This document shows positions 26,549 through 64,000 of a stretch of DNA of 64,000 nucleotides, piece after piece. Under the pieces are notes generated by a model. The model was not told where the DNA came from, made no database searches, and saw only the letters and a list, made by a program, of their open reading frames with translations. Within the stretch, counting starts at the first letter, position 1, and every line of letters begins with the position of its first letter. The DNA lies in the IMG/VR virus record IMGVR_UViG_3300032782_000001, positions 372,001-436,000 of that record; one strand, written 5' to 3'. A program made the translations under genes and the position numbers.

Positions 26549-28192
26549 CTAGGTCGAGGAGCCGCCGCCTTGTCGGATGTCACGGATAACGCGCCGGTTG
26601 ATGGCCGCGTTCACCCTTTCCAAAGAGACCCCCAACTTCAGGCTGATCTCGTCGGCTTCCATGCCTGCATCGTACATGAAACACACAAGGTCGGTCCTTG
26701 CAGCAACACACGGACCAAAAGTTTCGTCACCAATGATTTGCTCTGGCGTACATCCGTGCTTGTCACAAACATCACGCATGGCCTGGTCGACGTCCACAAG
26801 AGCAAGACGCCTGGTGATCTCGTCCCTGTGAGCACGGAGTTTGGCCATTGCAGAAGCCCGTAAGCGATTCACCTTCTGCAATGGCTTACCGCTGATCCCT
26901 GCATAGTCCTTGGCACTCATCTCTCCGAGGTCGAGAGACCGAATGACGGCTTCCTCGTCAGGCGTCAATCCAGCAGACGCCATGACTGCTGCCAGATCCT
27001 TACGGATCTCGACCTGACTGAATTGATTTTGCGAACCGGGATCACGAAACACCCGTTGACGACCCGTAGGGTCGTCAACATCTTCAGATTCCCAAGCAAC
27101 AGTCTCAGAGTCTCCAATTTCCGGAGAGAGACCGTTATTGAAAACCATAGTGGGCATATCGTCGCCACGCGAGATACGCTTGAAACTGTTGACGACTTCA
27201 TGATCGATGATCAGTTCTGCGTACTTGAGAAGACCTGCATCGATACCCGGTGCCACCCCATTCGGACCAGGAGGTCGCATGATGTGAAGAGGAGTGAATG
27301 CCGCATCCCCGGTTGACCGGAGCATATTGGTCTTTTTCCAGCCACGAAGCATGGGCTTCAGCTGCCGGTCATTCCATCGAAGCCTCGCGACTTTATCACG
27401 AATGGAAGGATGATTCCAGCCTCCGGGCTTGCTCCTATCCAAAGCGAGAGAAATGCCACGATCCTTGAGAAGTTTCAGTCCGTGTTCACAAGCCGGACAT
27501 GCAACGATCACGTGGTTATTGTAATGGCTAGCACAATAACCACGGCTGAAATGACGCCGAGGACAAGCGTTGCCAGCAGCATCAACATATGAACACACCG
27601 GCCCGTGGGGCTTGGGGTCCTCCACAACCTTGATACATTCATGCTCAGTGAGCTCAGCAGGCTTCAACCGACCCTGCCTATACATGGATTCAAGGATCCC
27701 GTAGGAACCGGCGGGATATCCAAGGAGCCTGAGGACATCATCACTGCTGATCGTGTGTCCTTGAATGGAATAGTAATAACGGGCGTAGTCGAATTTGGCA
27801 AAATCCAAAATATCAGACACACGCCAAAGTGAATCCGGACAAGACCGGACGCACGTCTTGGCCTTCATGCAGTGCTTGTTCTGGCACAGCGTAGGGCCAA
27901 CGTTGACAGGCAACAACGAACCAATGAAGACAATCGAAGCTCCGCCAAGCATGCGTTGAGCTTGAGACCGATCCACGATCTCATGGCGAAGATGCTTGAA
28001 AAACCACCGACCAATGAAGTCTTTGGTCAGGAGGCGAACCCGCACGTCCTGCGCGGCATCGGGGATCCTCTCCTTATCACGCTTGAACTTGCGCGAGACC
28101 TTCGAGAGGATCCACGCATGCCACTGACTCAGAAATGACTGGTTCGTCGGGATCGCGACAGTCTGATATTGCATGTAGCCTCCACGCGGCAA
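26549..28192 (-). CDS. Sigma-factor-like protein with a large Cys-rich insert and a C-terminal DnaA domain-IV-like HTH
   Basis: N-terminal RIPDAAQDVRVRLL (sigma-2-like); LTPDEEAVIRSLDLGEMSAKDYAGISGKPLQKVNRLRASAMAKLR (sigma-4-like); VCDKHGCTPEQIIG...VAARTDLV...ISLKLGVSLERV. Confidence 0.55.
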   Translation of the reverse strand: MPRGGYMQYQTVAIPTNQSFLSQWHAWILSKVSRKFKRDKERIPDAAQDVRVRLLTKDFIGRWFFKHLRHEIVDRSQAQRMLGGASIVFIGSLLPVNVGPTLCQNKHCMKAKTCVRSCPDSLWRVSDILDFAKFDYARYYYSIQGHTISSDDVLRLLGYPAGSYGILESMYRQGRLKPAELTEHECIKVVEDPKPHGPVCSYVDAAGNACPRRHFSRGYCASHYNNHVIVACPACEHGLKLLKDRGISLALDRSKPGGWNHPSIRDKVARLRWNDRQLKPMLRGWKKTNMLRSTGDAAFTPLHIMRPPGPNGVAPGIDAGLLKYAELIIDHEVVNSFKRISRGDDMPTMVFNNGLSPEIGDSETVAWESEDVDDPTGRQRVFRDPGSQNQFSQVEIRKDLAAVMASAGLTPDEEAVIRSLDLGEMSAKDYAGISGKPLQKVNRLRASAMAKLRAHRDEITRRLALVDVDQAMRDVCDKHGCTPEQIIGDETFGPCVAARTDLVCFMYDAGMEADEISLKLGVSLERVNAAINRRVIRDIRQGGGSST

Positions 28193-53511: not shown

Positions 53512-54927
53512 CTAAAGCCTATCTTCTGCAAAAACGTATCCACGCTCTCCGAATTTCACTCGCATGACTTCCATGATCCATGCTTTCCGGAAATTCCGGA
53601 AAGAAGCAAACTCTCGAAGTCTCCTAAATTCAGTCATAAGTACGTTATCTGCGATCCTGTGAACTTCCACCAAATGCCCATCAATGTAAGAGACGGTCCT
53701 TTCTGAAGTGGGGAATACAAAAGAACAATTCGCACAGATGCGATCACCAGATCGCATCACCAGACCGCAACTTGGACACATCTTCGTAGACGCAGATGCA
53801 ATGAGACCGCGTCCAACGAACAAATCATAAGATCTGACATGATCGGGTAAACCATGACGCAGAGCATTTCCGGAGTGATCGAGGATCACAGGAGGAGCCG
53901 GAATGCTGGCTGAAACATACTCCGGACGCATGCATCGACATGCCTGCTGCATATAGAGAGTTCGGGACAAAGTCGGTCGAGCTAAGATTACACATTTCAA
54001 TTCCGGACAATCCCATCCTTCGGAGAGCACCAAACAATTGGAAAGAACTTTGATATCACCTCTCAAGAACGATTCGAAGAATTTCCGCCTGGTCTCATCA
54101 GGAGTATCACTGTCAATATGTTCTGCAGTGACATCCGCACCTCGAAACGCTCGGACGATAGACTTGGAGTGTTCGACCCCCACCGCGAAACAGATGGTTG
54201 GACGACCGAAAGCGTGAGTTCGATAATGAGATATAATGTCTCCAACCAAATCAATGTCGTTCATGATCGCGTTTAACTGTGTCTCATCATAGTCCCCTCG
54301 AACGACTTTCAACCTGGCAAGGGCGGAGAGATTAGCGTATGGACGCGTAAACACACGCGGCCTCACTAAGTATCCATATTGAATTAATCTGGTAACTTCC
54401 TCACCGACAATGATTTCATCGAAGTCATTCCCGAGACCTTGTCCATCATAACGCCATGGAGTCCCCGTGAGTCCGAGAATTTTGGCTTCCGGATAAGCCG
54501 AGATGACTCGACGAGTGGATGCGTTGGGAGCTCGATGAGCCTCATCGACAATGATAATGTCGAAATGAGCGAATGCTTCATCCTCCATTTGGTTCAAAAA
54601 AGTATGGAGGGAACTAACCTGGATGGGTGCTCCGGGCTTGTTGGAAAAGGCTTTGTCGTCGCCAGAAGGGTTGGCCATAACGAGCCCGATGTCGTTCGGA
54701 TCGATCCCCTCTTGGACGAATTTCTGTAATGCTTGCCTTACGAGCTCCCGCCGATGAGCCAAAAATAAAATACGGAGACCAGCCGCAGCTGCGCGCTGCG
54801 AAACCAAAATAGCTACAAACGTCTTGCCGGCTCCCATATGCAAGACATACAGGATGCGCCGCACTCGCGTCCAAGCATCAAAGATCCGACGGACAGATGA
54901 GTCCTGATAATATCGGGCCTTATTCAT
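53512..54927 (-). CDS. SF2 DEAD/DEAH-like helicase with a C-terminal Zn ribbon
   Basis: Start moved to ATG 54927. MGAGKT, LAHRRELVRQ, IIVDEAHR, LGLTGTP, VLSEGWDCP, QQACRCMRP, CPSC...CANC. Confidence 0.9.
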   Translation of the reverse strand: MNKARYYQDSSVRRIFDAWTRVRRILYVLHMGAGKTFVAILVSQRAAAAGLRILFLAHRRELVRQALQKFVQEGIDPNDIGLVMANPSGDDKAFSNKPGAPIQVSSLHTFLNQMEDEAFAHFDIIIVDEAHRAPNASTRRVISAYPEAKILGLTGTPWRYDGQGLGNDFDEIIVGEEVTRLIQYGYLVRPRVFTRPYANLSALARLKVVRGDYDETQLNAIMNDIDLVGDIISHYRTHAFGRPTICFAVGVEHSKSIVRAFRGADVTAEHIDSDTPDETRRKFFESFLRGDIKVLSNCLVLSEGWDCPELKCVILARPTLSRTLYMQQACRCMRPEYVSASIPAPPVILDHSGNALRHGLPDHVRSYDLFVGRGLIASASTKMCPSCGLVMRSGDRICANCSFVFPTSERTVSYIDGHLVEVHRIADNVLMTEFRRLREFASFRNFRKAWIMEVMRVKFGERGYVFAEDRL

Positions 54928-56455
54928 CGCCAACCCATGGGCAAACGTACGTCCGATTGCCTTCGATCTTCCAACCTGGGAGAGGATTGATTTTGAAGTG
55001 GAAGAACTGAGAAGCGCTAATCTTCTTCCATGAATTTGACTTCGCGTGTTTCCCGCATGTGGGAATATAGAGGCGAGCTTTGGACCAAAACATTGTCGCA
55101 TGATTGGAACACTTGACGCATTTCCAAATGACGACAGTGACTTCCTTGTCATTGGACTCTTGGACTACAGCCTTTCGTCCTTTGTGGTTACCGGCTAAGA
55201 CCAATACGATATCACCAGGTTCCAAAGCAAATTGCGGAAAGCTGCTGTACGCTTCTCGCATGATCGCAGATGACTTTTCGTAGTCATTGCGTTTAATCAA
55301 TGATTCCAGAGACGAACGACGCTGCTTCGCCAGCTTCGCGACAGCCCGATGGATCAGTTTAATGTCGCGAACATGCTCGGCGAGTTTCTTGCGATTGACC
55401 GCCATTTCTTCATGGCGCCGTTTCGCTTCTTGTTCCCGTCGTTCCCGTTTCTCTTGAAGAGCCCGATTTCGCTTATCCTTCCGAAGTTTTTCTGCTTCCA
55501 GCTTCTCCTGATGTTTCTTAGTTGCTTCTTCAGCCCTTTGCCGGCCGGAATTGTGCCAATCTTCCCAGGCTTCTTGGAGACCTTTTTCGAAGTCGCTAAT
55601 GAATAGCTCGGGTCGATGCCCCCAATTTGGGATCCGACCGCCCGGGATGGAGGCGTACAAATTCAACAGTCTATTTTTCTTGGAGGAATTGCGAATGAAT
55701 TGGAGGCTATACACTAAATGTTGACGTACGCGTTCTGCAGATCCTCCTTCACCTTGAGTGGCTTCAGACTTAATCGGCGGACATTTATTCAACGACCGCC
55801 CAGCCTCCGCGTATGTCATCGGCTCTCCGAAGAACCCGAAACATGCGAGCAGGCAATACCACTGCCGTGTAGTAAGAAGCTTCAAGACGCCGCGAATAGT
55901 GTTAATGGTGCGGAGAACATCTTTCGGGTGAACATCTAGAGAATGTTCATTTCCGCAATCTACTACACGGCAATGATATGACAAATTATCGTGAACGAAT
56001 GGAAGCTTCTTGTTGGCAATTTCTGGCCAAATTTCTTCCGGGATTTGACCGAGACCTTCAGCAAGCCGCTTGGCGGAGGCCTTCCAATCACCTCGCTTGT
56101 CATCCCATGGACTTTCACGACCGTGTTCATAAGAAGAGATAACGTCGTTCGGTAGTTCGGTTAGTCGAGAGACGGATGTGATACTGTCGTGCCCTAAACT
56201 ATTGCGCAATTGGAAAATGCGATTGCGTTTATGAGATGACTTGGAAGGCGGTTCTCCTCGGATTTTGAGAGGATGGATAGCAACCGATGTGTCCATCCCC
56301 GATTCCACTCGACGTACGAACCTGTCGGCTGACACTCCGAAGATGAATTCGACGTCTTCGGCCGTCATCTTCTCGCCAAACACTTCCCAATTGCGAGTGT
56401 TAAGCGTTCGATCGCAGCCGATTGGCTCTTCGGACGGCTTGTCCTCGGAGTTCAT
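54920..56455 (-). CDS. Multidomain regulator: XRE-like HTH, sigma-4-like HTH, coiled coil, KOW-like and Cys/His motifs
   Basis: SITSVSRLTELPNDVISSYEHG; LTTRQWYCLLACFG...MTYAEAGRSL...SAERVRQ; LEPGDIVLVLAGNHKGRKAVV; CVKC...CGKH. Confidence 0.6.
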   Translation of the reverse strand: MNSEDKPSEEPIGCDRTLNTRNWEVFGEKMTAEDVEFIFGVSADRFVRRVESGMDTSVAIHPLKIRGEPPSKSSHKRNRIFQLRNSLGHDSITSVSRLTELPNDVISSYEHGRESPWDDKRGDWKASAKRLAEGLGQIPEEIWPEIANKKLPFVHDNLSYHCRVVDCGNEHSLDVHPKDVLRTINTIRGVLKLLTTRQWYCLLACFGFFGEPMTYAEAGRSLNKCPPIKSEATQGEGGSAERVRQHLVYSLQFIRNSSKKNRLLNLYASIPGGRIPNWGHRPELFISDFEKGLQEAWEDWHNSGRQRAEEATKKHQEKLEAEKLRKDKRNRALQEKRERREQEAKRRHEEMAVNRKKLAEHVRDIKLIHRAVAKLAKQRRSSLESLIKRNDYEKSSAIMREAYSSFPQFALEPGDIVLVLAGNHKGRKAVVQESNDKEVTVVIWKCVKCSNHATMFWSKARLYIPTCGKHAKSNSWKKISASQFFHFKINPLPGWKIEGNRTYVCPWVGDE

Positions 56456-56555: not shown

Positions 56556-57275
56556 ATGGAAACCTTCCGAGGTCGCCCATTGACCGAGACTGAAATTCAA
56601 TGGCGAACCGAAGGCCGATGCATTGGATGCGGAGCTCCCGCCCGGAAAGTCAAAATGAAAGACGGGACCATTCGCCCTGATATGGAATGCAAAGATTGCT
56701 ACGGATCCAGGAATTCATACCCTTCCGGAGGCAATTCATTCCGTGAGTTCGGTGCTTCTCGAGCATCTGTTGGACATGAATATCGATCCCGGCTTGGTTA
56801 CTCTTCCCGAGCCGGCGGAGCCCCACGACAACCCGGAGAAGAAACTGCCACCCAGAAAACCGAAGTTTGGTTGTCTACCCCGGAGCCCAAACTCCTTCCC
56901 TCACCAGAACCGCCCTTCCAAATCACCCCCTCCAGGGTAAAAATCGTGCATATGCGGTGGTCTGGAATGTCTATCGCCGACATCGCACATGAACTTCGTC
57001 TATGGGTGCCAAACGTCCGACATGTTCTTCAGAAACTTCGAGCCTCTAAAAGTACCATCCCAGACTGGGCCCAAGACTGGTTAAGGCAGGAAGTTTATAG
57101 CCGAGATCAACCCGACCATCTGACCCGCAAACATGAAGAAACCCTTCAACACACCATCTCCCAACTTCTCAGCCGCGGCATCCCAAAAGTAGTCATCCTG
57201 GAAACCCTCGGACTCCATTCGGAACGCGACGCGTCCCTCATGGAACCCTGCGGTTGCTTCTCCGACCAAACATAA
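56556..57275 (+). CDS. Zn-finger plus HTH protein
   Basis: CIGC...CKDC; IVHMRWSGMSIADIAHELRLWVPNVRHVLQKL. Confidence 0.65.
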   Translation: METFRGRPLTETEIQWRTEGRCIGCGAPARKVKMKDGTIRPDMECKDCYGSRNSYPSGGNSFREFGASRASVGHEYRSRLGYSSRAGGAPRQPGEETATQKTEVWLSTPEPKLLPSPEPPFQITPSRVKIVHMRWSGMSIADIAHELRLWVPNVRHVLQKLRASKSTIPDWAQDWLRQEVYSRDQPDHLTRKHEETLQHTISQLLSRGIPKVVILETLGLHSERDASLMEPCGCFSDQT

Positions 57276-57431
57276 GATCGTTCAATTACCCCGAACGACG
57301 TTCCGAACCAGGCACTACCCCCTAGAAAAGGGATCGTCCACGCAAAAATCGAACGAATACTTTGAAGCGCTCAGGGACCCAATTTTCCCTGTGCATGAAC
57401 TTCCCCATCCAAAAAGATTTACCTCGTCACT

Positions 57432-57498
57432 CCCTCCCCCTCTCCCCTATCCCATACCCTCCCACCCCCATACTACTCCCCCTATCCCTATTTATCCC
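57432..57498. repeat. Pyrimidine/C-run low-complexity tract (G-runs on the minus strand)
   Basis: ccctccccctctcccctatcccataccctcccacccccatactactccccctatccctatttatccc: at least 10 runs of 3 or more C. Confidence 0.85.
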
Positions 57499-57842
57499 TA
57501 CTGGGTGGCCATGGGGGCGAGGGCCCGCATCTCCGGGATGTCGTAGTAGCAGACCGGCCCGTAGCAGTTCGGGGGCGTCGGCGCGGGGCGCCAGCTCCGG
57601 GCCGCGGCGGGCCTTTCCGCGCGCTTGGCGGTCGTCGGGCGGGTCTCGGGCCGCGGGAAGATCGGAGACGCTCCCGGGGCCACGTAGACGGCCGGAGCGA
57701 CCGGTTCGGGCTTCGGCGCTTCCTGGACGGGGGTCGGATCGGGCTGGCGCGTCCCGTAGATGCGCAGTTCGCCTTGGAAGAGCGAGGGGCCGAAGGCGTA
57801 GGCGGCGAGGCCGAGGACCAGCAGGACGAGGAACGTCTTCAT
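57498..57842 (-). CDS. Small secreted or membrane-anchored Pro/Ala-rich protein
   Basis: MKTFLVLLVLGLAAYAFG signal/TM; promoter motif 8 nt upstream. Confidence 0.75.
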   Translation of the reverse strand: MKTFLVLLVLGLAAYAFGPSLFQGELRIYGTRQPDPTPVQEAPKPEPVAPAVYVAPGASPIFPRPETRPTTAKRAERPAAARSWRPAPTPPNCYGPVCYYDIPEMRALAPMATQ

Positions 57843-57894
57843 ATCTCCGGATACGGCGGACGGGGCCGGACTTGTCGCCCGGCCCCGCGGCCCG

Positions 57895-58155
57895 TCACTC
57901 GGGCAGAACGGCCAGGGCGGCGCGGAAGAGGGCCGGGCGGCCGGTCATGAAGACCCAGGGCGCCCCGTCTTCCTCGTCGCCTTGACGGAACAGGGCGACG
58001 CAGGAGTTGCCCCGGGCGACGAGGCCAACCGCGTTCCCCTTGAGGTCAGGGCCGGCGTGCCCCTGGTTGACGTTGATCTTGGGGTCACCCGAGACCTTCA
58101 CTTGGTACTCGCGACCCGAGAACACGAACGAACCCTCGAAGGACCATTTGCTCAT
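57895..58155 (-). CDS. Small early-type hypothetical protein
   Basis: ATG 58155, 8 nt after the promoter motif; 86 aa. Confidence 0.7.
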   Translation of the reverse strand: MSKWSFEGSFVFSGREYQVKVSGDPKINVNQGHAGPDLKGNAVGLVARGNSCVALFRQGDEEDGAPWVFMTGRPALFRAALAVLPE

Positions 58156-58207
58156 GGGTTGCAATACGGCGAGGGCCGCCAGGTTTCCCCAGCGGCCCTC
58201 GGTCCGT

Positions 58208-58435
58208 CTAGCAGCGCTCCATGCGGCGCGCCCACCGCTCGTAGTCCTCGACCTGCTCCTCCGTCATCTTGGGGACGAGAGGAGTCCGGGAGCCAGACTC
58301 GTCCTCGTACTCGAGCGTGTCGCCGTGCGAGGCCATGTTCGGGCTGACGCATTGCCCGATGGGTGCGTGCTTGACGAGCCGGGTCAGGGGCTTGGCCGTG
58401 CGGTCTGCGTCGAGACGTGCCTTCTTCGTGTCCAT
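58208..58435 (-). CDS. Small hypothetical protein, paralogue of 60439-60627
   Basis: GGAGGTG RBS plus promoter motif; KARLDADRTAKP...VKHAPIGQCV...LEYEDE. Confidence 0.75.
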   Translation of the reverse strand: MDTKKARLDADRTAKPLTRLVKHAPIGQCVSPNMASHGDTLEYEDESGSRTPLVPKMTEEQVEDYERWARRMERC

Positions 58436-58506
58436 CGTCGTCACCTCCGACCTGGAATACGACAAGAGGGACCGGACTTGCGCCCGGTCCCCTGGGTCCT
58501 GGTGGG

Positions 58507-58725
58507 CTATTCGCCCTTGGCCGCTTTCCTTCCTGCTTCGGTGACCCTGATGTTGCCTTCCGCGTCCTCTTCGAGCATGCCGCGGCGCAGCAATGCTTCG
58601 TGCGTCACGATGTTCTGGTGGTGCGTCGGGCGTCGCATGCCGATCTTGGTCTTTTGACCCTTGTTGCTGTCTTCGACCCCGACGCACCATTTGAGATCTT
58701 CGAGCATCCGCTGGCTGAGCTTCAT
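58507..58725 (-). CDS. Small winged-helix-like hypothetical protein
   Basis: RBS plus promoter motif; EALLRRGMLE...IRVTEAGRKA. Confidence 0.7.
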   Translation of the reverse strand: MKLSQRMLEDLKWCVGVEDSNKGQKTKIGMRRPTHHQNIVTHEALLRRGMLEEDAEGNIRVTEAGRKAAKGE

Positions 58726-58774
58726 CCCGTCACCTCCGGGGCAGAATACGCCCCGGAGCGCGGAATTTGCGGCT

Positions 58775-59011
58775 TTAGGGCACTTCCATCCGGACGGTGA
58801 TTTGGTCGTCCTTCCCTTCCCATCCGTCCGGGTGCGCGTCGTAGAAGCCATCCCGGACTTCGAGGTTGCCCACGAGGACGCCCGACTCGTCCTGCTCGGT
58901 GTGGAATTCCCCGACCGCCGTATGCCACGCCACGATGTTCTTAGCGCGTCGGATCGCTTCGTCCGACGTCATGGTGTCCGGCTTCTCGATCCCGATGAAG
59001 ACCATTTCCAT
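58775..59011 (-). CDS. Small hypothetical protein
   Basis: RBS plus promoter motif; 78 aa. Confidence 0.7.
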   Translation of the reverse strand: MEMVFIGIEKPDTMTSDEAIRRAKNIVAWHTAVGEFHTEQDESGVLVGNLEVRDGFYDAHPDGWEGKDDQITVRMEVP

Positions 59012-59062
59012 CTCGTCACCTCCAGCCAGGAATACGGCCGGAGGTGCGAGATTTACAGGCCT

Positions 59063-59278
59063 TCAGGCTGCGAACCGGGTTGCTTCCTCGGCGAAGACCG
59101 AGAGAACGTCGGCCGCTTCCTCGAGTTCGGTCTCGAGGAAATCGACCTGTGCCTGGTTGTATTCCAAGTCCTCGTAGTCGGTGTAGCCCTCCGCGTCCGT
59201 GGACGCTGCGTGAGCCGCCTCGTACGCATCCCCGATGGCCATTCCGAGCAGCGAATCCCTGGCGATCACCTTCTCCAT
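59063..59278 (-). CDS. Small acidic hypothetical protein
   Basis: RBS plus promoter motif; ATG 59278. Confidence 0.7.
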   Translation of the reverse strand: MEKVIARDSLLGMAIGDAYEAAHAASTDAEGYTDYEDLEYNQAQVDFLETELEEAADVLSVFAEEATRFAA

Positions 59279-59364
59279 TGTCGTCACCTCCGACCAGGAA
59301 TACGACGGAGAACGCAGGATTTACAAGTCTGAAGCGGCGCGCGGCGGATTTCTGCTCTGCCCGG

Positions 59365-59436
59365 AGGATCCGGCGGGATTCGAACCCGCGACCATGGGGT
59401 TAAAAGCCCCTAGCTCTACCCCTGAGCTACGGATCC
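59365..59436 (-). tRNA. tRNA-Lys (anticodon UUU)
   Basis: Cloverleaf: acceptor GGATCCG/CGGATCC, D arm GCTC-AGGGGTA-GAGC, anticodon loop CT-TTT-AA, T arm GCGGG-TTCGAAT-CCCGC. One A-A mismatch at the top of the anticodon stem; no encoded CCA. Confidence 0.93.
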
Positions 59437-59438
59437 AA

Positions 59439-59454
59439 TGTTTCACGTGAAAAC
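59439..59454. promoter_or_regulatory. parS-like site
   Basis: TGTTTCACGTGAAAAC versus consensus TGTTTCACGTGAAACA (14/16); intergenic. Confidence 0.5.
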
Positions 59455-59457
59455 ATC

Positions 59458-59487
59458 GGGACGGCGGGTGTAGTGACCCGCCGTCCC
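59458..59487. terminator. 12-bp GC hairpin after the 59499-59684 gene
   Basis: gggacggcgggt-gtagtg-acccgccgtccc. Confidence 0.55.
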
Positions 59488-59498
59488 TTGGGGTTGTG

Positions 59499-59684
59499 TC
59501 AGCCCACGCCGTAGACCGCCATGTGCTCGATCCACGGATGGACGCGGACCCCACGCTTGGTCGGGGGCGGCGGTTCCGTGGCCCATGCCGCGTACGCCTT
59601 GCAGTCTTCGCACTCCCCGCAAGGCTCCGGCTCGCCCGTGCAGACCTTGGAATCCTCGACCGGCGCATTGAACCTCGTGTTCAT
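59499..59684 (-). CDS. Small Cys-containing protein
   Basis: RBS plus promoter motif; C...PCGECEDC. Confidence 0.7.
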   Translation of the reverse strand: MNTRFNAPVEDSKVCTGEPEPCGECEDCKAYAAWATEPPPPTKRGVRVHPWIEHMAVYGVG

Positions 59685-59726
59685 CGTCATCACCTCCGAC
59701 CATGAATACGGCCGGAGGCGACGGAT

Positions 59727-59999
59727 TTACACCTCGCGGATTTGGTCTCGCGCCTCGCGCTTGTGGAACTGGCGACGCACCTTGCCCACCAGCTGCTTGA
59801 CGCGGTGCGTCGACCGACCACCAGTAGCGGCAGTGCTGTAGCGGTCGAGGTGGCCGTCGCGGAAGGTCGCGCAGATCTCCGAGCCGAAGTGGCCGGCTTG
59901 GAAGCGTTGACCGATCGTCATCTTCGGATGGTTGCGCGACGGCTCCGAGAGCCACTTCGTGTACCGCATCGTGGGAACCTTGCGCGTCGTCCTTGCCAT
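59727..59999 (-). CDS. Small basic hypothetical protein
   Basis: RBS plus promoter motif; ATG 59999. Confidence 0.7.
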   Translation of the reverse strand: MARTTRKVPTMRYTKWLSEPSRNHPKMTIGQRFQAGHFGSEICATFRDGHLDRYSTAATGGRSTHRVKQLVGKVRRQFHKREARDQIREV

Positions 60000-60004
60000 C
60001 TCGA

Positions 60005-60193
60005 TCACCTCCGTTTCTGAGTACGCGACCGAGAGTTGGACTTGCAACTCCAAAACACCGTCAAGTACGGGCCGACGTACGAGCGGTCTGACTTCAGGAG
60101 CTTGTTGCCCATCTTCTCGAGAAAGGCGTCAATCTCCTCGTCCGAGTCGAAGCGCTTGCTGTGCTCGTAGTCCACCCCATCCAACATTGGCAT
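60005..60193 (-). CDS. Small hypothetical protein
   Basis: RBS plus promoter motif; ATG 60193. Confidence 0.6.
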   Translation of the reverse strand: MPMLDGVDYEHSKRFDSDEEIDAFLEKMGNKLLKSDRSYVGPYLTVFWSCKSNSRSRTQKRR

Positions 60194-60255
60194 GTTGTCA
60201 CCTCCAATTTGGAATACGACGGAGAAGGCCGGACTTGCGCCCGGCCCTTGCCCGA

Positions 60256-60390
60256 TCAGCCCACAGGCCCGCGCACCTCGCAGGCGAGCCAGACCAGACC
60301 GTGCCAGACCCCCTGGCGCCGGAAGTACGCGATCCAGCCCCCGAACTCCTCCGAAACGAGCCGCGGCAACCGCACGAGACGAGAAACCAT
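60256..60390 (-). CDS. 44-aa microprotein (below the ORF-track cutoff)
   Basis: GGAGGTG RBS plus promoter motif; MVSRLVRLPRLVSEEFGGWIAYFRRQGVWHGLVWLACEVRGPVG. Confidence 0.65.
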   Translation of the reverse strand: MVSRLVRLPRLVSEEFGGWIAYFRRQGVWHGLVWLACEVRGPVG

Positions 60391-60438
60391 GTCCGCCACC
60401 TCCGGCCGAGGATACGACCGGAGGTGGCGGATTTGCGG

Positions 60439-60627
60439 TCAGGTGAGCTTGGTGCGGAGCCCGTCCTCGTCCTCGTACTCGAGGTCCGTGAGGTGCGTGT
60501 GCGGTCCGACGCACTGGCCGACGGGCACGTGCTTGACGATTCGCGTCTTCGGCTTGGCGGTCTTGTCCGCGTCGAGACGGGCCTTCTGGCAGAGCGTGTC
60601 GTAGTCGTCCAAGAGCTTCGTGTTCAT
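60439..60627 (-). CDS. Small hypothetical protein, paralogue of 58208-58435
   Basis: RBS plus promoter motif; KARLDADKTAKP...VKHVPVGQCV...LEYEDE. Confidence 0.75.
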   Translation of the reverse strand: MNTKLLDDYDTLCQKARLDADKTAKPKTRIVKHVPVGQCVGPHTHLTDLEYEDEDGLRTKLT

Positions 60628-60689
60628 CGAATCACCTCCGACTGAGAGTACGGCGGAGAGGGCCGGACTTGCGCCCGGCCCCCGGCCCT

Positions 60690-60929
60690 TCAGGGCGCCT
60701 CGACCATCAGGTCCAGAAACGCCTGGCCATCCGGCGTAAGCGCTTCGGCGTCCACGAAGCCCACAGCCGTCTGCCGGGTCCGCAAGTCGGCCGTCTGTCC
60801 CTCGGCCGTCTCGCCCACGGTGAGGCGGTCCGAGAAGAGGCCGGCCTGCGTCCCATCCGCCCAACAGACCGCGATCGTCAGGCCCAGGCCCAGGCTGTCC
60901 GCGAACACCGCCTTGTTCGTCAATTTCAT
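60690..60929 (-). CDS. Small hypothetical protein
   Basis: RBS plus promoter motif; ends ALTPDGQAFL (wHTH-like). Confidence 0.7.
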   Translation of the reverse strand: MKLTNKAVFADSLGLGLTIAVCWADGTQAGLFSDRLTVGETAEGQTADLRTRQTAVGFVDAEALTPDGQAFLDLMVEAP

Positions 60930-61024
60930 CGTCGTCACCTCCGACCAGGAATACGGCAGGACGGGCGGGATTTACACGACGCGGGCCGGGTTGTAAATCC
61001 CCCGGCCCGCGTCGTATTCGGATC

Positions 61025-61375
61025 TCAGTGGCAGCGGAGCGTAACCGTCCGGCTGCCCCACGCGCCCTGGCCGCTGCCGGGCTTCGCGTTCCAGAGCGCA
61101 CCGACCTCTCGGGTCTCGCCGTCGTTGCAGGGGGCCGCTTGCACGTGGACCGCCTTGGGCGCGGGGCGCGGCTTGGACGCCACGATCGTGATCGGGATCT
61201 CGAGGGGCGCGGGCTCGTCGTGGGCCTTCTCGGGCGCCGGTGCGGGCTTGGGCGCCTCCTGCGTGGCCACGGGCGCCGCCTTGGCCGTGGGCTCCACGAA
61301 CGTGCTTCCGAGCCAGACGCTCGCGGCCGCCGCCAGGATCCACGCGCCGATCGTCGCCATCGTCTTCTTCGTCAT
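61025..61375 (-). CDS. Small secreted or membrane-anchored Pro/Ala-rich protein
   Basis: RBS plus promoter motif; TM IGAWILAAAASVWLG; PA-rich linker; C-terminal C...C domain. Confidence 0.7.
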   Translation of the reverse strand: MTKKTMATIGAWILAAAASVWLGSTFVEPTAKAAPVATQEAPKPAPAPEKAHDEPAPLEIPITIVASKPRPAPKAVHVQAAPCNDGETREVGALWNAKPGSGQGAWGSRTVTLRCH

Positions 61376-61555
61376 GATCATCACCTCCATCCCCCGATAC
61401 GACGACGAGCCGCAGACTTCCGAACCCGGCAGGCCTATGCAAATTGTTGCAAGTTGGAAGTATTGGAGGACGGAGGGGGCTTGCGTGTCTCGTTCCAATT
61501 GCAAGACATGACGATGCCCAGACTCCGTAAATTGGAGCCCGGGCATCGTATGCGT

Positions 61556-61738
61556 TCAGCGGCAGCCGCGTGCGTTGAACCGCGGGTCTCGCTCGTGGTT
61601 CTTCTGCCACGTGGTGGGCCGCTTGGCTCCTGCGTCGCGCGGCGCGCTGGCGAGGAGCCTTTCGTAGAAGCCGGGCTCCTTGTCGTGGCAGCCTTCGGGC
61701 GGCGAGCATCGCAACGTGTCGGGTTCTTGGTCGTCCAT
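61556..61738 (-). CDS. Small hypothetical protein
   Basis: RBS plus promoter motif; ATG 61738; 60 aa. Confidence 0.55.
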   Translation of the reverse strand: MDDQEPDTLRCSPPEGCHDKEPGFYERLLASAPRDAGAKRPTTWQKNHERDPRFNARGCR

Positions 61739-61846
61739 CGCGTCACCTCCGCCCACGCATACGACGACGAGCCGCAGACTTCCGAACCCGGCAGCGGGCC
61801 GCAAATTGTGCTGTGGGTGCCGTATCACTGGTTGGAGGTGACGACA

Positions 61847-62374
61847 ATGAACCAGGACATCGACACGCAGGTTTCGGATTCTCTCTTCGGCGCGGCTCTC
61901 GTTCAGGCGGTTCTCGCGGAGCCCGAGACCACGGAGCCCTGCCCCGCGACGGCCCGCTCGGCCAAGCCCGCGGAAATCCAGCCCGCCACGGCGTACTCCA
62001 AGTCGGAGGTGACGACGATGAACCAGAACAGCTACCCGTTCCGCAGCAAGGCCCAGATCGCAGCAGCTCTCGCCGAAAGCGCGCCCTTCCGCCTCGAGTG
62101 CCTCGGCATCCTGTTCGATCGCCAGACGGCGTACGAACAGAGCTCCGAGACCACGCTCAACCGCAACCGCCAGGGCTTCATGAGCTCGCACGCCGTCCAC
62201 GGCTGCCGCATCGCCAAGAAGATGCGGGCCGGCGAGGAGCTCACCGCCGAGGATCTCGATCGCGTCGCGACGATCGTGCCGCGCTACACCCGCCAGCTCG
62301 CCGAGCACTTCCGCCACGAGGCGGTTGCGGCGAACCCGGCCCTCAAGGCGGCGGCCGCAGTCTTCGGGGTCTGA
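61847..62374 (+). CDS. Hypothetical protein with a second in-frame start at 62018
   Basis: Two promoter-plus-GGAGGTG cassettes give ATG 61847 and ATG 62018 in the same frame; both begin MNQ. Confidence 0.7.
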   Translation: MNQDIDTQVSDSLFGAALVQAVLAEPETTEPCPATARSAKPAEIQPATAYSKSEVTTMNQNSYPFRSKAQIAAALAESAPFRLECLGILFDRQTAYEQSSETTLNRNRQGFMSSHAVHGCRIAKKMRAGEELTAEDLDRVATIVPRYTRQLAEHFRHEAVAANPALKAAAAVFGV

Positions 62375-62420
62375 GATCGGACCAGGGGGGCGCGTAACCG
62401 GAAGGCCGGTACGCGCCCGG

Positions 62421-62470
62421 CCAACAGCCAAAGCACGATTCCAATATTGGAATCGTGCTTTGGCTGTTGG
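62421..62470. repeat. Perfect 50-bp palindrome (no loop)
   Basis: ccaacagccaaagcacgattccaat|attggaatcgtgctttggctgttgg. Confidence 0.95.
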
Positions 62471-62542
62471 ATTTCTGTCTCTTCGGTTTTCGTCGTCTCG
62501 TAGATCCGTCGGTCCGCGGCGTATCCCAGATCGGAGGTGACG

Positions 62543-62815
62543 ATGACGACGATCGAAAGCGCCGTTTACAAGCCGTTGGAGCAGGACGAGCAGCCGGGCA
62601 TGCCGACCTTCCGCGTGAAGGGTGTGTACGATGGGGCTCCGTTCGAAGGGGAACTGTCCGTCGAGGTCGACGGACGGGACATCGAGTGGAAGGGAACGCC
62701 TGACCCGGACGGCCCGGATTGGAACTCCGGGATGTGTGCTGCCATCATCGAGGAGCTCTGGAGTCTTCCCGCTTGGGAAGACGCCCGGTCGGAGCACGGC
62801 GAGTACATGGGCTGA
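62543..62815 (+). CDS. Small acidic hypothetical protein
   Basis: RBS plus promoter motif; ATG 62543. Confidence 0.7.
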   Translation: MTTIESAVYKPLEQDEQPGMPTFRVKGVYDGAPFEGELSVEVDGRDIEWKGTPDPDGPDWNSGMCAAIIEELWSLPAWEDARSEHGEYMG

Positions 62816-62860
62816 ACAGACATGCCGGAGGGATCTGAATGATCCCTCCGGCATGTCTGT
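62816..62860. repeat. 20-bp perfect inverted repeat with a 5-nt loop
   Basis: acagacatgccggagggatc-tgaat-gatccctccggcatgtctgt. Confidence 0.95.
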
Positions 62861-62983
62861 ATTGGGGGATCTGTAAGTTTCTCCATACCTACGTGTATAT
62901 TTACACGTTGCCTCCGGCCGTGGACGCACGGGTGACGAGTGGCGGAGCTGCCTGAAGCCGGATAAAGGGGACAGCCGCTCTTT

Positions 62984-63020
62984 ATCTATGGCAGGGATCA
63001 CGGCGATCCCTGCCATAGAT
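62984..63020. repeat. 16-bp perfect inverted repeat with a 5-nt loop
   Basis: atctatggcagggatc-acggc-gatccctgccatagat. Confidence 0.95.
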
Positions 63021-63041
63021 CTTTGGTAAAATCCTTAGGTC

Positions 63042-63368
63042 ATGACGCCGAGCCAGGTTGCCCAGTCCCTCCGCCACATCGCTTCCAAGATCGACAACTC
63101 CAAGTTGCCCGACCGGACTTTGGTCGCGCGCGACCTGCGCGGTTTGCTCACGCAGATTGCGCAGGAGCAAGAGGAGTGCGGCATGGGTGGGGTTGCCCAA
63201 CAGCAGCAGGGTCAGCAGGAGCAGCAGGCTCTTCCGAAGTCCGGCGTCGGCCAGCAGATGCTCATGGAGGCCATCAGCGAGCTTCAGGACGCTGCGAAGT
63301 CCGGCGACCACAGCAAGTTCGAGAAGGCTCTCGCCAAGGTCAACGGCGCCAAGGCGAAGGCTGGCTGA
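63042..63368 (+). CDS. Hypothetical Gln-rich helical protein
   Basis: 108 aa; LRHIASKIDN helix; QQQQGQQEQQ; flanked by related hairpins. Confidence 0.7.
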   Translation: MTPSQVAQSLRHIASKIDNSKLPDRTLVARDLRGLLTQIAQEQEECGMGGVAQQQQGQQEQQALPKSGVGQQMLMEAISELQDAAKSGDHSKFEKALAKVNGAKAKAG

Positions 63369-63420
63369 AATATCTGGCAGGGATGAAAGAAAACCCTGCC
63401 GGATACTCGGGCGTCGCGGT

Positions 63421-63531
63421 TTACGATCCGTAGTACCAGAGCGGGATGCGCTTGTAGACGCCAGGTCCCTGGATGACGTACCAGGGCTTGTTGTTGATGA
63501 TCTGCACTTCCCCATTGATCTTGTTCGGCAT
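63421..63531 (-). CDS. 36-aa microprotein (below the ORF-track cutoff)
   Basis: GGAGGTG RBS plus promoter motif; MPNKINGEVQIINNKPWYVIQGPGVYKRIPLWYYGS. Confidence 0.65.
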   Translation of the reverse strand: MPNKINGEVQIINNKPWYVIQGPGVYKRIPLWYYGS

Positions 63532-63679
63532 CGCGTCACCTCCACTGTTCGGGTACGCGGCGAATCCGTCGATCTATGGCAGTATTCAGTTTGATCTATG
63601 CCAGATAGTCGTCAAGCCGGCCAGGAACCCATTCCCAGTCGGCTTGACGGTGGCGACGACGCCAACTCTTTTAACGATT

Positions 63680-63758
63680 GCTGATAGGCGGGAGTCGAAC
63701 CCGCCGCCGCGTACCACCTGACCGGTTTCTCGCCGACGAAAGCGTTACTCCCTGTCAG
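63680..63758 (-). ncRNA. tRNA-like element (T arm plus possible acceptor stem; no canonical D or anticodon arm)
   Basis: GCGGG-TTCGACT-CCCGC T arm, followed by CTATCAG that can pair with upstream CTGACAG (6/7). Confidence 0.4.
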
Positions 63759-64000
63759 GTTCGTCAGTTACGCGACCCGAAGCCCCGGATCGTGCTATTG
63801 CGCGCGGTAGTGGTCCAGACTGCGGCCTCTTGGGTTGTCTTCCCTTGGTGAGGCGCCGCGTGTCTCTTGCACTGCCGCGCTAAGTTTTTACGTCGACTAG
63901 AGGAAGATCTCGCGGAGCTCAGACAAGACCTTCTTGCGATCCTTCGACGAGAGCTCCTTCCGCGTACCTGTTGTTCTCTTCGTAGACTTCGACCACGGAC

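What the first reader, a model, noticed from the sequence alone, without database searches (positions are those of the whole stretch)
57851..63575. Nineteen promoter cassettes with an invariant 14-nt spacer, one per small gene
Seen: A(A/G)(A/G)T (once AAAC)-N14-CGTA(T/C), typically then 8-9 nt, GGAGGTG and a start codon. Upstream variants are TGTAAAT, CGCAAAT, GCAAGT, GGAAGT, TAGAT and GGAAAC. The motif predicts two microproteins the ORF track missed (60256-60390, 63421-63531). Known: ECF sigma promoters have an AA(C)-type -35 and a CGT(A) -10. Inference: a monocistronic gene-cassette array run by an ECF-like host or phage sigma rather than the housekeeping sigma. The conserved cassette heads may also serve as recombination points for shuffling genes.
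Basis: partly seen in the sequence, partly recalled or inferred. Interest (0 to 1): 0.8.

Follow-up and report, generated by a model that had tools for sequence, protein, structure and literature searches.

The report
Huge-phage ECF-type promoter cassettes
The repeats are real, standardised promoter-plus-ribosome-site cassettes placed before almost every gene in a GC-rich 53-kb arm of a 436-kb uncultivated wetland phage, probably read by the phage's own ECF-like sigma factor; this is a new variant of the promoter/terminator cassettes known from T4-type phages.

Summary
ARRT-N14-CGTAY occurs 24 times in the window against 2.3 expected, 19 of them in 57851-63575, plus one GGAAAC variant. These belong to about 60 cassettes that span genome 429.8 kb through the ends to about 46 kb of a complete 436,316-bp phage. 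The same cassette is clustered in one arm of at least five related huge phages.

The consensus is CGyAARTyC-N11-CGTAYyc-N6-GGAGGTGA-N4-5-ATG. Position +13 from the C of CGTA is the first G of the Shine-Dalgarno sequence in 108 of 130 cassettes. It is the A of an ATG in 12 of 22 cassettes that lack a Shine-Dalgarno sequence. This points to a transcription start at about +13.

Divergent gene pairs have nothing but two cassettes between them, and the arm holds no sigma-70-type promoter. The motif is ECF-like: AA in the -35, CGTA in the -10, and a 14-bp spacer.

The phage encodes a 221-aa ECF-like sigma outside the window. It is 51-62% identical in five relatives whose cassettes were read, and it sits behind a sigma-70-type promoter. 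It is the best candidate reader, but this is unproven.

Strong hairpins over the -35 or the -10/SD occur in about half of the cassettes. The closest known system is the PeSL cassette of T4-type phages. I rate this a new variant of a known kind.

The parts
57840..57875 (-). Cassette, leaderless type: GACAAGT-N14-CGTAT, ATG at +13; gene 57842..57498 (114 aa)
58153..58188 (-). Cassette, leaderless type, GGAAAC variant: ATG at +13; gene 58155..57895 (86 aa)
   Evidence: the Logan gene caller calls this 86-aa ORF
58433..58481 (-). Cassette (GCAAGT, -35 in the GCAA loop of a terminator-like hairpin); gene 58435..58208 (75 aa)
58723..58770 (-). Cassette (GCAAAT) with a spacer/SD hairpin; gene 58725..58507 (72 aa)
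59009..59056 (-). Cassette (GTAAAT) with a spacer/SD hairpin, -32.5 kcal/mol; gene 59011..58775 (78 aa)
59276..59324 (-). Cassette (GTAAAT); gene 59278..59063 (71 aa)
59363..59436 (-). tRNA-Lys(UUU) inside the array, with no cassette of its own; it lies after terminator-like hairpin 59458-59487
59682..59730 (-). Cassette (GTAAAT) with a spacer/SD hairpin, -28.9 kcal/mol; gene 59690 or 59684..59499 (63 or 61 aa)
59997..60045 (-). Cassette (GCAAGT); gene 59999..59727 (90 aa)
60191..60238 (-). Cassette (GCAAGT in a hairpin loop); gene 60193..60005 (62 aa). The X2 variant has an in-frame 102-nt deletion at 60069-60170
60388..60436 (-). Cassette (GCAAAT) with a 17-bp spacer/SD hairpin, -38.6 kcal/mol, and compensatory SD variant GGAGGTGG/CCACCTCC; micro-ORF 60390..60256 (44 aa)
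60625..60672 (-). Cassette (GCAAGT in a hairpin loop); gene 60627..60439 (62 aa), a paralogue of 58435..58208
60927..60975 (-). Cassette (GTAAAT) placed directly after a 17-bp terminator hairpin (60975-61017); gene 60929..60690 (79 aa)
60993..61017 (+). Orphan motif match with no SD and no credible ORF; it is the mirror image of the palindromic hairpin
   Evidence: (I22)
61373..61421 (-). Cassette (GGAAGT); gene 61381 or 61375..61025 (118 or 116 aa). Part of the 85-nt duplicated block D8
61527..61551 (+). Orphan cassette (GTAAAT-N14-CGTAT) with no SD or ORF; it points antisense into gene 61738..61556
61736..61783 (-). Cassette (GGAAGT), back to back with the next one; gene 61738..61556 (60 aa)
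61801..61849 (+). Cassette (GCAAAT), divergent partner; ORF 61847..62374 (175 aa)
61972..62020 (+). Duplicated cassette head in frame inside the 175-aa ORF; internal start 62018..62374 (118 aa, a multi-copy family)
62421..62470 (.). Perfect 25-bp palindrome, terminator-like in both directions
   Evidence: I15
62500..62545 (+). Cassette (GTAGAT); gene 62543..62815 (90 aa), followed by the 20-bp palindrome 62816-62860
   Evidence: I23
63529..63577 (-). Cassette (ATAGAT); micro-ORF 63531..63421 (36 aa)

Best explanation
Each repeat is a compact promoter-plus-translation-start cassette.

A bipartite, ECF-type promoter starts transcription about 13 nt after the C of CGTA. Its -35 is G-N-A-A-R-T at about -33..-28, its spacer is an invariant 14 bp, and its -10 is CGTAY at about -13..-9.
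- In most cassettes the start is the first G of a perfect Shine-Dalgarno sequence (GGAGGTGA), followed 4-5 nt later by the ATG. The 5' leader is therefore only 12-13 nt.
- In a minority the start is the ATG itself, giving a leaderless mRNA.

The window holds 20 of about 60 such cassettes. They head almost every gene of a 53-kb GC-rich arm of a complete 436-kb phage from a wetland metagenome. The arm carries small ORFan genes plus conserved AAA ATPase, DUF2201, BRCT and DNA ligase genes.

The most likely reader (inferred, about 0.45) is host core RNA polymerase carrying the phage's own 221-aa ECF-like sigma (genome 175734-176399). That gene sits behind a sigma-70-type promoter, which would give a two-step cascade.

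GC-rich hairpins occur in about half of the cassettes. One type encloses the -35. The other pairs an anti-SD in the spacer with the SD. They probably stop read-through from the upstream cassette or silence its translation.

The repeated heads also give short homologies at which genes can be swapped, as shown for PeSLs of T4-type phages.

Shown: the motif, its excess over chance, its geometry, its conservation among relatives, the hairpins, and the sigma-like fold. Inferred: the transcription start, the identity of the sigma, the timing, and the role of the hairpins.
For: - Excess over chance: 24 matches against 2.3 expected. Matches are confined to one arm: 64 against 17 in the remaining 384 kb.
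- Logo with two conserved blocks, a fixed 14-nt spacer, and nothing conserved upstream of -21.
- The same cassette is clustered in one arm of G001 (30 sites), G003 (18), G004 (13) and another metagenomic relative. The reversed-pattern control gave 0.
- A variant, GGAAGT-N13-CGT(C/T), stands before the orthologous AAA ATPase in G011.
- Position +13 is the first G of GGAG in 108 of 130 SD-type cassettes. It is the ATG in 12 of 22 cassettes without an SD, across six phages.
- Divergent pairs 61763(-)/61821(+) and genome 1611(-)/1724(+) hold only the two cassettes.
- The arm has no sigma-70-like sites.
- No RNAP beta or T7-type polymerase was found in the phage (the T7-type search had no working control).
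- The 221-aa protein reaches Pfam Sigma70_r2 above its cut-off and hits TIGR02937 (33.2 bits, below that model's 42.9-bit cut-off). Its model matches sigmaE, sigmaE region 2 bound to -10 DNA, and the SigE N-terminal domain.
- It is 58-62% identical in G001-G003 and 51% in G011. A sigma-2 block of 28 residues (SAHDPRKSSFGHY.Y..ANNVCIN.V) is nearly invariant; 24 positions are identical in 11 of the 12 sequences.
- It is preceded by TTGnnn-N17/18-TAnAnT in all four complete phages.
- ECF promoters: AAC in the -35, CGT in the -10, CGTA for sigmaW, spacers of 14-17 bp (PMC5758882).
- Hairpins: native -13.6 kcal/mol against -11.8 +/- 0.3 with swapped arms. Single examples have z of -4.5 to -7.5, with compensatory SD/anti-SD changes.
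Against: - No transcript 5' ends are available; no RNA run could be listed.
- The -35 ends in A/G-T, not the canonical AAC. The spacing is at the short end of the ECF range.
- The sigma assignment is circumstantial. Two other conserved sigma-4-containing proteins (323 aa and 547 aa) and an RpoD-like sigma are also present in the relatives searched.
- Sigma region 2 is identical in G011, although its -10 differs after CGT.
- The sigma gene is not autoregulated by the cassette, unlike most ECF sigmas.
- The host-like codon usage and perfect SD of the arm (GC3 0.78 against 0.48) would also fit immediate-early expression by a pre-existing host factor.
- More than half of the cassettes lack a strong hairpin, so the insulation role cannot be general.
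Confidence: 0.75

Rival explanations
1. The cassettes are promoters, but a host alternative (ECF-type) sigma or another pre-existing host factor reads them. The arm would then be the immediate-early, host-takeover region, and the phage ECF-like sigma would serve a different (later) gene class.
For: - The arm's codon usage matches a high-GC host (GC3 0.78-0.85 against 0.48 for the rest).
- The Shine-Dalgarno sites are perfect, and the genes are small ORFans, as in early host-takeover modules.
- The motif is ECF-like (PMC5758882).
- The phage sigma gene is not preceded by its supposed own motif.
Against: - The motif is kept in relatives whose arms differ by 10-20% in GC (45-56% in G003, 60-66% in G000). 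This suggests different hosts, while the phage sigma is conserved.
- ECF sigmas are normally held inactive by anti-sigmas, which is a poor basis for early phage expression (general knowledge).
- The full cassette is not clustered in any of 185,579 bacterial species genomes; there were 14 scattered single hits. This test is weak, because it required the SD.
Confidence: 0.2
2. The repeats act at the RNA level. They would be inter-cistronic stem-loops with conserved loops (GNAA.., CGUAUYC) in long polycistronic transcripts, serving as processing sites or translational operators for a phage RNA-binding protein rather than as promoters.
For: - Both conserved blocks often lie in hairpin loops. Eleven sites have the -35 in a loop and 13 have the -10 in a loop.
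- There are compensatory changes between the anti-SD and the SD.
- Processing at +13 could also create 5'-AUG ends.
Against: - 29 of 53 cassettes have no strong hairpin.
- Covariation in a fixed register is weak outside one pair.
- Divergent gene pairs have no other sequence that could hold a promoter.
- The arm has no sigma-70-type promoter to make the long transcripts.
- There was no Rfam match.
- The block positions (-33..-28 and -13..-9 relative to +13) are those of a sigma-dependent promoter.
Confidence: 0.07
3. The conserved blocks are operators for a phage DNA-binding regulator that acts on some other, weak promoter. A candidate regulator is the conserved 323-aa protein with two sigma-region-4 HTH domains.
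For: - There are two conserved blocks about two helical turns apart.
- A two-HTH protein is conserved at 65-75% identity in the five relatives searched.
Against: - No other promoter-like signal is present in the roughly 50-nt intergenic spaces.
- The two blocks are unlike each other.
- The fixed +13 relation to the SD or ATG fits a start site.
Confidence: 0.05

Closest known systems
PeSLs (promoter-early stem-loops) of T4-type phages (Arbiol et al. 2010, PMC2839356; Comeau et al. 2014, PMC4122927)
   Same: - About 50 short intergenic cassettes per genome, concentrated in hyperplastic regions and mostly before ORFans.
- Each holds a strong promoter, a stem-loop that may lie over the -35, between the boxes or over the -10, then the SD and the start codon.
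- The stem-loops attenuate upstream transcription.
- The repeats act as exchange points for genes.
   Different: - The PeSL promoter is the host sigma-70 consensus with an AT-rich upstream region. Here the promoter is ECF-type (GNAART-N14-CGTAY) in GC-rich DNA, with no sigma-70 features.
- The phages are unrelated 360-436-kb huge phages.
- The start is inferred to lie at the SD or ATG itself.
- Recombination and mini-circles are not shown here.
ECF sigma promoters, e.g. B. subtilis sigmaW (TGAAAC-N16-CGTA) and sigmaV (GCAAAC ... CGTC) (PMC5758882)
   Same: - A conserved AA in a G-N-A-A -35 element.
- A CGT(A) -10 element.
- A short spacer within the reported 14-17 bp range.
- Close adherence to the consensus.
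   Different: - The -35 ends in (A/G)T instead of C.
- The spacer is at the short extreme.
- The regulon is a phage genome arm, not a stress regulon.
- The candidate sigma is very diverged: it has no PDB sequence hit and is not autoregulated.
Phage-encoded diverged sigma with its own promoter class: phiEco32 gp36 (AATGTA centred at -11.5; PMC12276001). From my own knowledge, SPO1 gp28 and T4 gp55 are similar cases.
   Same: - A small, distant sigma homologue made from a host-type promoter redirects host core polymerase to a phage-specific consensus.
- The -10 shares GTA.
- The gp79-dependent RNAP open-complex structure that holds gp36 (9m7y, chain F; I infer that this chain is gp36) is among the fold hits.
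   Different: - gp36 promoters are mainly a -10-type element. Here a -35 element is as strongly conserved.
- No sequence similarity to gp36 was shown, and the fold hit is weak (E 0.39).
Promoter-inside-hairpin translational control of T4 genes e, 49 and I-TevI, and fold-back inhibition of IS10 transposase (from my own knowledge, not checked here)
   Same: Read-through transcripts can fold an upstream arm onto the SD. Transcripts started at the gene's own promoter lack that arm and are translatable.
   Different: Here the arrangement is built into about a quarter of a standard cassette family, and the upstream promoters are of the same class. It is untested.
SPO1 host-takeover module (from my own knowledge)
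   Same: A cluster of small genes, each with a very strong promoter and a near-perfect SD.
   Different: The SPO1 promoters are host sigmaA type. Timing in the present phage is unknown.

Membership tests
ECF-type (group 4 sigma) promoter | -35 element with a conserved AAC | tested here: inconclusive
   AA is invariant by selection, and the flanking C-G and y-C are conserved. The third base is A/G followed by T. True AAC occurs once in the window (58183-58188).
ECF-type (group 4 sigma) promoter | -10 element with a CGT core | tested here: met
   CGTA(T/C) is present in G000-G004 and CGT(C/T) in G011. CGTA is the sigmaW-type -10 (PMC5758882).
ECF-type (group 4 sigma) promoter | Spacer of 14-17 bp with close adherence to the consensus | tested here: met
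   An invariant 14 nt lies between GNAART and CGTA.
ECF-type (group 4 sigma) promoter | Transcription by an ECF sigma holoenzyme starting a few nt downstream of the -10 | not testable with these tools
   There is only indirect evidence: the SD or the ATG is fixed at +13. No RNA runs could be listed.
Sigma-70 family, ECF-like (the 221-aa protein, genome 175734-176399) | Sigma region 2 domain | tested here: met
   Pfam PF04542 gave 29.8 bits against a cut-off of 24. TIGR02937 gave 33.2 bits, E 3.7e-8, below that model's 42.9-bit cut-off. Fold hits include sigmaE region 2 (2map, 4lup) and the SigE N-terminal domain 8b3z, with TM by target of 0.47-0.62.
Sigma-70 family, ECF-like (the 221-aa protein, genome 175734-176399) | Sigma region 4 HTH domain | tested here: inconclusive
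   No Pfam region 4 hit. The model has a C-terminal four-helix domain (residues 150-220). Full-length alignments to sigmaE 1or7 cover 171 columns at low TM. A motif VSTKTVRDMRNQIK resembles ECF region 4.2 by eye.
Sigma-70 family, ECF-like (the 221-aa protein, genome 175734-176399) | No regions 1.1 and 3; size about 170-220 aa | tested here: met
   The protein is 221 aa with no region 3 or region 1 hits.
PeSL-type composite promoter/terminator cassette | Repeated intergenic unit of promoter + stem-loop + SD + start codon, concentrated before ORFans in a variable region | tested here: met
   Searches show the unit. The window's cassette genes and the uncassetted gene 63042-63368 (18 proteins in all) have no Pfam hit, and few have homologues in the relatives.
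PeSL-type composite promoter/terminator cassette | The promoter is a strong host sigma-70 consensus with an AT-rich upstream region | tested here: not met
   No sigma-70-like site occurs in 57000-64000 or in the arm. Nothing is conserved upstream of -21.
PeSL-type composite promoter/terminator cassette | Recombination between cassettes causing gene gain, loss or replacement (mini-circles) | tested here: inconclusive
   There is a head duplication in frame at 61972-62020 and a duplicated 85-nt block D8. In the second sample X2, homology breaks at head 58431 and depth is zero over 58042-58423, 59570-59760 and 62435-62625. X2 coverage is only 5x and comes from contigs.

The most novel reading that the evidence does not exclude
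A clade of uncultivated 360-440-kb phages carries a self-contained, orthogonal expression system. A phage ECF-like sigma, switched on from a host-type promoter, would fire about 60 standardised cassettes whose transcripts begin exactly at the Shine-Dalgarno sequence or at the AUG. The arm is written in the host's codon dialect while the rest of the genome relies on the phage's own 48 tRNAs. The cassettes would double as terminators, read-through silencers and recombination modules that keep a hypervariable pool of small takeover genes turning over.
Probability: 0.35. Interest if true: 0.65.

Novelty: new variant of a known kind. Interest (0 to 1): 0.5.

Why it matters
- It gives a concrete, testable promoter consensus and a candidate cognate sigma for a widespread but uncultivated clade of huge phages, whose gene regulation is unknown.
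- It defines their probable early/middle regulon, including dozens of ORFan and micro-protein genes that ordinary ORF tracks can miss.
- It extends the PeSL idea of regulatory cassettes as units of gene shuffling beyond T4-type phages and beyond sigma-70 promoters.
- A sigma plus a very uniform promoter/RBS part could also be useful as an orthogonal expression part, as other ECF sigmas have been.

Tried and rejected
- **RNA evidence:** two run searches found only two DNA runs from wetland metagenomes and no RNA run, so start sites could not be mapped.
- **Other promoter classes in the rest of the genome:** k-mer enrichment upstream of crude ORF calls gave nothing convincing. Sigma-70-like sites are not enriched genome-wide (35 against about 70 in shuffles).
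- **Reading the cassette as a sigma-70 promoter** (TATyCn as the -10, CGyAAA as the -35 at 17 bp): rejected, because the T at -7 is not conserved and the -35 matches 2 of 6 positions.
- **Phage RNA polymerase:** no RNAP beta or T7-type polymerase was found. The T7 search had no positive control.
- **Host identification:** the RpoD-like sigma is about 44% identical to RpoD of many phyla. The multi-copy 118-aa family has only unnamed metagenomic relatives. The host remains unknown.
- **Sigma by presence or absence:** this failed, because all candidate factors are conserved in all the relatives checked.
- **More distant relatives found through the sigma** were fragments, mostly without the arm.
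- **Window ORF 26549 as a sigma:** only a region-4-like HTH was found (PDB profile E 0.0014 to FliA region 4), with no similarity to the ECF-like sigma family. ORF 25251 had no hits.
- **The 'joints' reported for run X1** come from paralogous contigs with short flanks and were not taken as recombination.

Full report
**Where the window lies.** The window is bases 372001-436000 of a single 436,316-bp virus record with a 128-bp terminal overlap. It is classed as complete and comes from a wetland metagenome. The genome is about 50% GC overall, but the last 7 kb of the window rise to 58-73%. This GC-rich stretch continues across the ends of the record to about 46 kb. The phage carries 48 tRNA genes and a tmRNA gene, so it is a 'huge phage'.

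**The observation.** ARRT-N14-CGTAY occurs 24 times in the window against 2.32 +/- 1.53 in dinucleotide shuffles (none of 100 reached more than 6). Nineteen of the matches lie in 57851-63575.
- Sixteen of the 20 sites continue with exactly 8 nt, GGAGGTG, and a start codon at +23 to +26 from the C of CGTA.
- Two have the ATG itself at +13.
- Two are orphans.

Genome-wide, 44 sites match the strict form (with GGAGGTG) and 64 match the loose form. All lie between 429.8 kb and 45 kb through the ends. The other 384 kb hold 17 loose matches, which is about the chance rate.

**Anatomy.** A logo of 53 sites gives C-G-y-A-A-R-T-y-C-g-n-C, 7 variable nt, G-n-C-G-T-A-T-y-c, 5 variable nt, y-GGAGGTGAcg, then ATG. 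Nothing is conserved upstream of -21. Orientation always matches the downstream ORF.

Every predicted ORF in the window's part has GC3 of 0.78-0.94 with GC2 well below it. This is the periodicity of real coding sequence and includes the two micro-ORFs (44 aa and 36 aa, GC3 0.84). The JGI and Logan gene callers independently call these micro-ORFs and the 86-aa leaderless ORF.

**Evidence that the cassettes are promoters, and where transcription starts.**
- Divergent gene pairs (starts at 61738 and 61847; genome 1585 and 1744) are separated by about 110-160 nt that consist of two back-to-back cassettes and nothing else.
- The scan for sigma-70-type promoters finds none in 57000-64000 (0.8 expected), and my stricter scan finds none in the whole arm.
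- Over six phages, GGAG begins at +13 in 108 of 130 SD-type cassettes. Among 22 cassettes without an SD, an ATG opening an ORF of at least 40 aa sits at exactly +13 in 12, at +12 in one, and at +14 in three. One of these +13 ATGs, in an independent metagenomic relative, coincides with a gene start called by the public pipeline.

A position that is either the first base of the SD or the A of the AUG is what one expects of a transcription start. With +13 as +1, CGTAY lies at -13..-9 and GNAART at -33..-28. This is inference; no RNA run could be listed.

**Conservation.** The exact pattern retrieved other huge phages from IMG/VR. With one mismatch allowed, the record G001 (393 kb) has 30 sites within 325-370 kb, apart from one outlier at 115 kb. 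G003 (427 kb) has 18 within 179-226 kb. The fragment G004 has 13 and G002 has 6. The reversed pattern gave 0 everywhere.

Lineage variants keep CGTA(T/C) and c-G-N-A at fixed distance but loosen the rest of the -35. In the more distant G011 the orthologous genes carry GGAAGT-N13-CGT(C/T).

The arms are homologous. An AAA_5 ATPase, a DUF2201 VWA/metallopeptidase protein and an ATP-dependent DNA ligase are cassette-driven in G000 and 43-62% identical in G001-G004. A BRCT protein (38-59% identical) and a DUF6011 protein are likewise cassette-driven but were each found in only three of the four. The window's cassette genes and the uncassetted gene 63042-63368 (18 proteins in all) have no Pfam hit and few homologues. 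One 118-123-aa family is present in two or three copies per phage in G000, G001, G003 and G004 (one copy in G002) and in more than 130 metagenomic clusters. In one relative a cassette heads an operon of overlapping small genes, so 'one per gene' is not universal.

**Which polymerase and sigma.** No RNAP beta or T7-type polymerase was detected, so host core polymerase is assumed. The motif is ECF-like. ECF promoters share AAC in the -35 and, for sigmaX/W/M, CGT in the -10. CGTA is the sigmaW form, sigmaV uses GCAAAC/CGTC, and spacers range from 14 to 17 bp (PMC5758882).

The phage encodes several sigma-related proteins:
- An RpoD-like sigma of 402 aa, whose region 4.2 reads SRERIRQ as in E. coli. 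It should read TTGACA-type -35 boxes.
- A 221-aa protein with a region 2 above the Pfam cut-off and a TIGR02937 (ECF superfamily) hit below that model's cut-off. Its AlphaFold model (pLDDT 73) matches sigmaE, sigmaE region 2 bound to -10 DNA, the SigE N-terminal domain and sigma-28.

The 221-aa protein is 58-62% identical in G001-G003 and 51% in G011. Its sigma-2 block of 28 residues is nearly invariant. In all four complete phages the gene is preceded by TTGnnn-N17/18-TAnAnT. This suggests a cascade from a primary-type sigma to the ECF-like sigma to the cassettes.

This assignment is circumstantial.
- A host ECF sigma cannot be excluded.
- Against a host factor, the motif is kept in relatives whose arms differ by 10-20% GC, and the full cassette is not clustered in any of 185,579 bacterial species genomes.

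**Hairpins.** The segment from spacer through CGTAT to the SD folds at -13.6 kcal/mol on average, against -11.8 +/- 0.34 when 5' arms are swapped among sites and -10.2 +/- 0.32 when they are shuffled.
- Thirteen of 53 sites have a strong hairpin (-18 kcal/mol or lower). In the longest, a 10-17-bp stem pairs an anti-SD (TCACCTCC) in the spacer with the SD, and CGTAT lies in the loop. Compensatory pairs occur (GGAGGCGA/TCGCCTCC, GGAGGTGG/CCACCTCC).
- Eleven other sites have a strong hairpin whose loop is the -35, typically a GCAA tetraloop, followed by a U-rich stretch that includes the -10.
- No site has both.
- Covariation in a fixed register is otherwise weak, and 29 sites have neither hairpin. 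The structure is therefore an option, not the core of the element.

If transcription starts at +13, the 5' arm is absent from a cassette's own mRNA but present in read-through from upstream. The hairpins would then terminate read-through or silence its translation. This is inferred.

**Comparison with known systems.** The closest system is the PeSL of T4-type phages. About 50 intergenic cassettes per genome each hold a strong early promoter, a stem-loop in one of several positions relative to the boxes, and the SD and start codon. They sit mostly before ORFans in hyperplastic regions and were shown to terminate, to promote and to mediate gene exchange (PMC2839356, PMC4122927).

The present cassettes share all of this except the promoter type, which is ECF-like rather than sigma-70, and the phage lineage. 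Recombination is only hinted at here:
- A head plus its first codons is duplicated in frame inside ORF 61847-62374.
- An 85-nt divergent-promoter block is duplicated, with one partner decayed to AGTAT.
- In a second wetland sample, 97-99% identical contigs stop matching at head 58431, and depth is zero over three parts of the stretch (58042-58423, 59570-59760, 62435-62625). Coverage there is only 5x.

A precedent for a small, diverged phage sigma with its own consensus is phiEco32 gp36 (AATGTA at -11.5; PMC12276001).

**Verdict.** The feature is real, highly non-random and conserved. It is best explained as an ECF-type promoter/RBS cassette family that runs one arm of a huge phage. It is a new variant of a known kind. 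The sigma assignment, the timing and the roles of the hairpins need experiments.

Noticed in passing
window 57200-64000 versus the rest; genome 429-436 kb and 0-47 kb: There are two codon regimes in one phage. Cassette genes have GC3 of 0.78 (0.85 in the window's part), with AAA at 6 and TTA at 0 per 1000 codons. The other 247 long genes have GC3 of 0.48, with AAA at 25 per 1000. The arms of the relatives G001, G003 and G004 also have stretches richer in GC than the sequence next to them within the fetched regions.
   Followed up: partly
window 59363-59436 (-) and genome 11591-11667 (-): The only two tRNA genes inside the GC-rich arm are Lys(UUU) and Leu(UAA). They read A/U-ending codons that the arm's own genes hardly use. 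The other 45 tRNA genes found by ARAGORN (two of them called tRNA-SeC) lie at 97-139 kb, and a tmRNA gene lies at 141 kb. Neither arm tRNA has a cassette upstream.
   Followed up: partly
window 63680-63760 (-): A tRNA-like remnant: GGCGGGAGTCGAACCCGC matches the T-arm region of the tRNA-Lys at 94% (repeat D17). ARAGORN and Rfam call no gene here.
   Followed up: no
genome about 176400-176520 (-); L059 (G001) upstream of the sigma gene: The sigma-70-type promoter of the ECF-like sigma gene is followed or overlapped by palindromes with TCTAC...GTAGA half-sites. In G000 this is a 17-bp inverted repeat. In G001 there are two 15-16-bp palindromes. They look like operators for a repressor of the sigma gene.
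   Followed up: no
window 61527-61551 (+) and 61440-61480 (+): An orphan cassette with no SD or ORF points antisense into gene 61738..61556. Nearby lies a decayed copy of a + strand cassette (GCAAATTGT...AGTAT) inside the duplicated 85-nt block.
   Followed up: partly
window 62984-63015, 63370-63401, 63572-63603: There are three copies of a roughly 32-nt repeat (ATCTATGGCAGGGATC...), partly palindromic, flanking gene 63042-63368. That gene has no cassette. The -35 variants 'TAGAT' overlap these repeats.
   Followed up: no
window 62018-62374 (+); genome 1744-2115 (+): A 118-123-aa family of unknown function has two or three copies per phage in G000, G001, G003 and G004 (one in G002). It has 139 clusters in public metagenomes, on contigs of up to 439 kb, and no Pfam domain.
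   Followed up: partly
genome 369397-370368 (-); window 26549-28192 (-); window 54923-56455 (-): There are three further proteins with sigma-region-4-like HTH domains. One is 323 aa with two such domains and is 65-75% identical in the relatives. One is 547 aa and 39-65% identical. One is 511 aa and also has a KOW motif. Their roles in transcription are unknown.
   Followed up: partly
L089-L091 (G011, 40-100 kb): A more distant relative uses a variant cassette, GGAAGT-N13-CGT(C/T). It often has a longer leader holding a GTGGGCG...CGCCC hairpin before the SD.
   Followed up: partly
L092-L094 (G010, about 141.2-141.6, 149.1-149.5, 157.1-157.3 and 177.6-177.9 kb): There are long runs of a 15-nt period (CAGGTTCGCCCCGGA-like). 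They are probably pentapeptide-repeat protein genes, in several copies.
   Followed up: no
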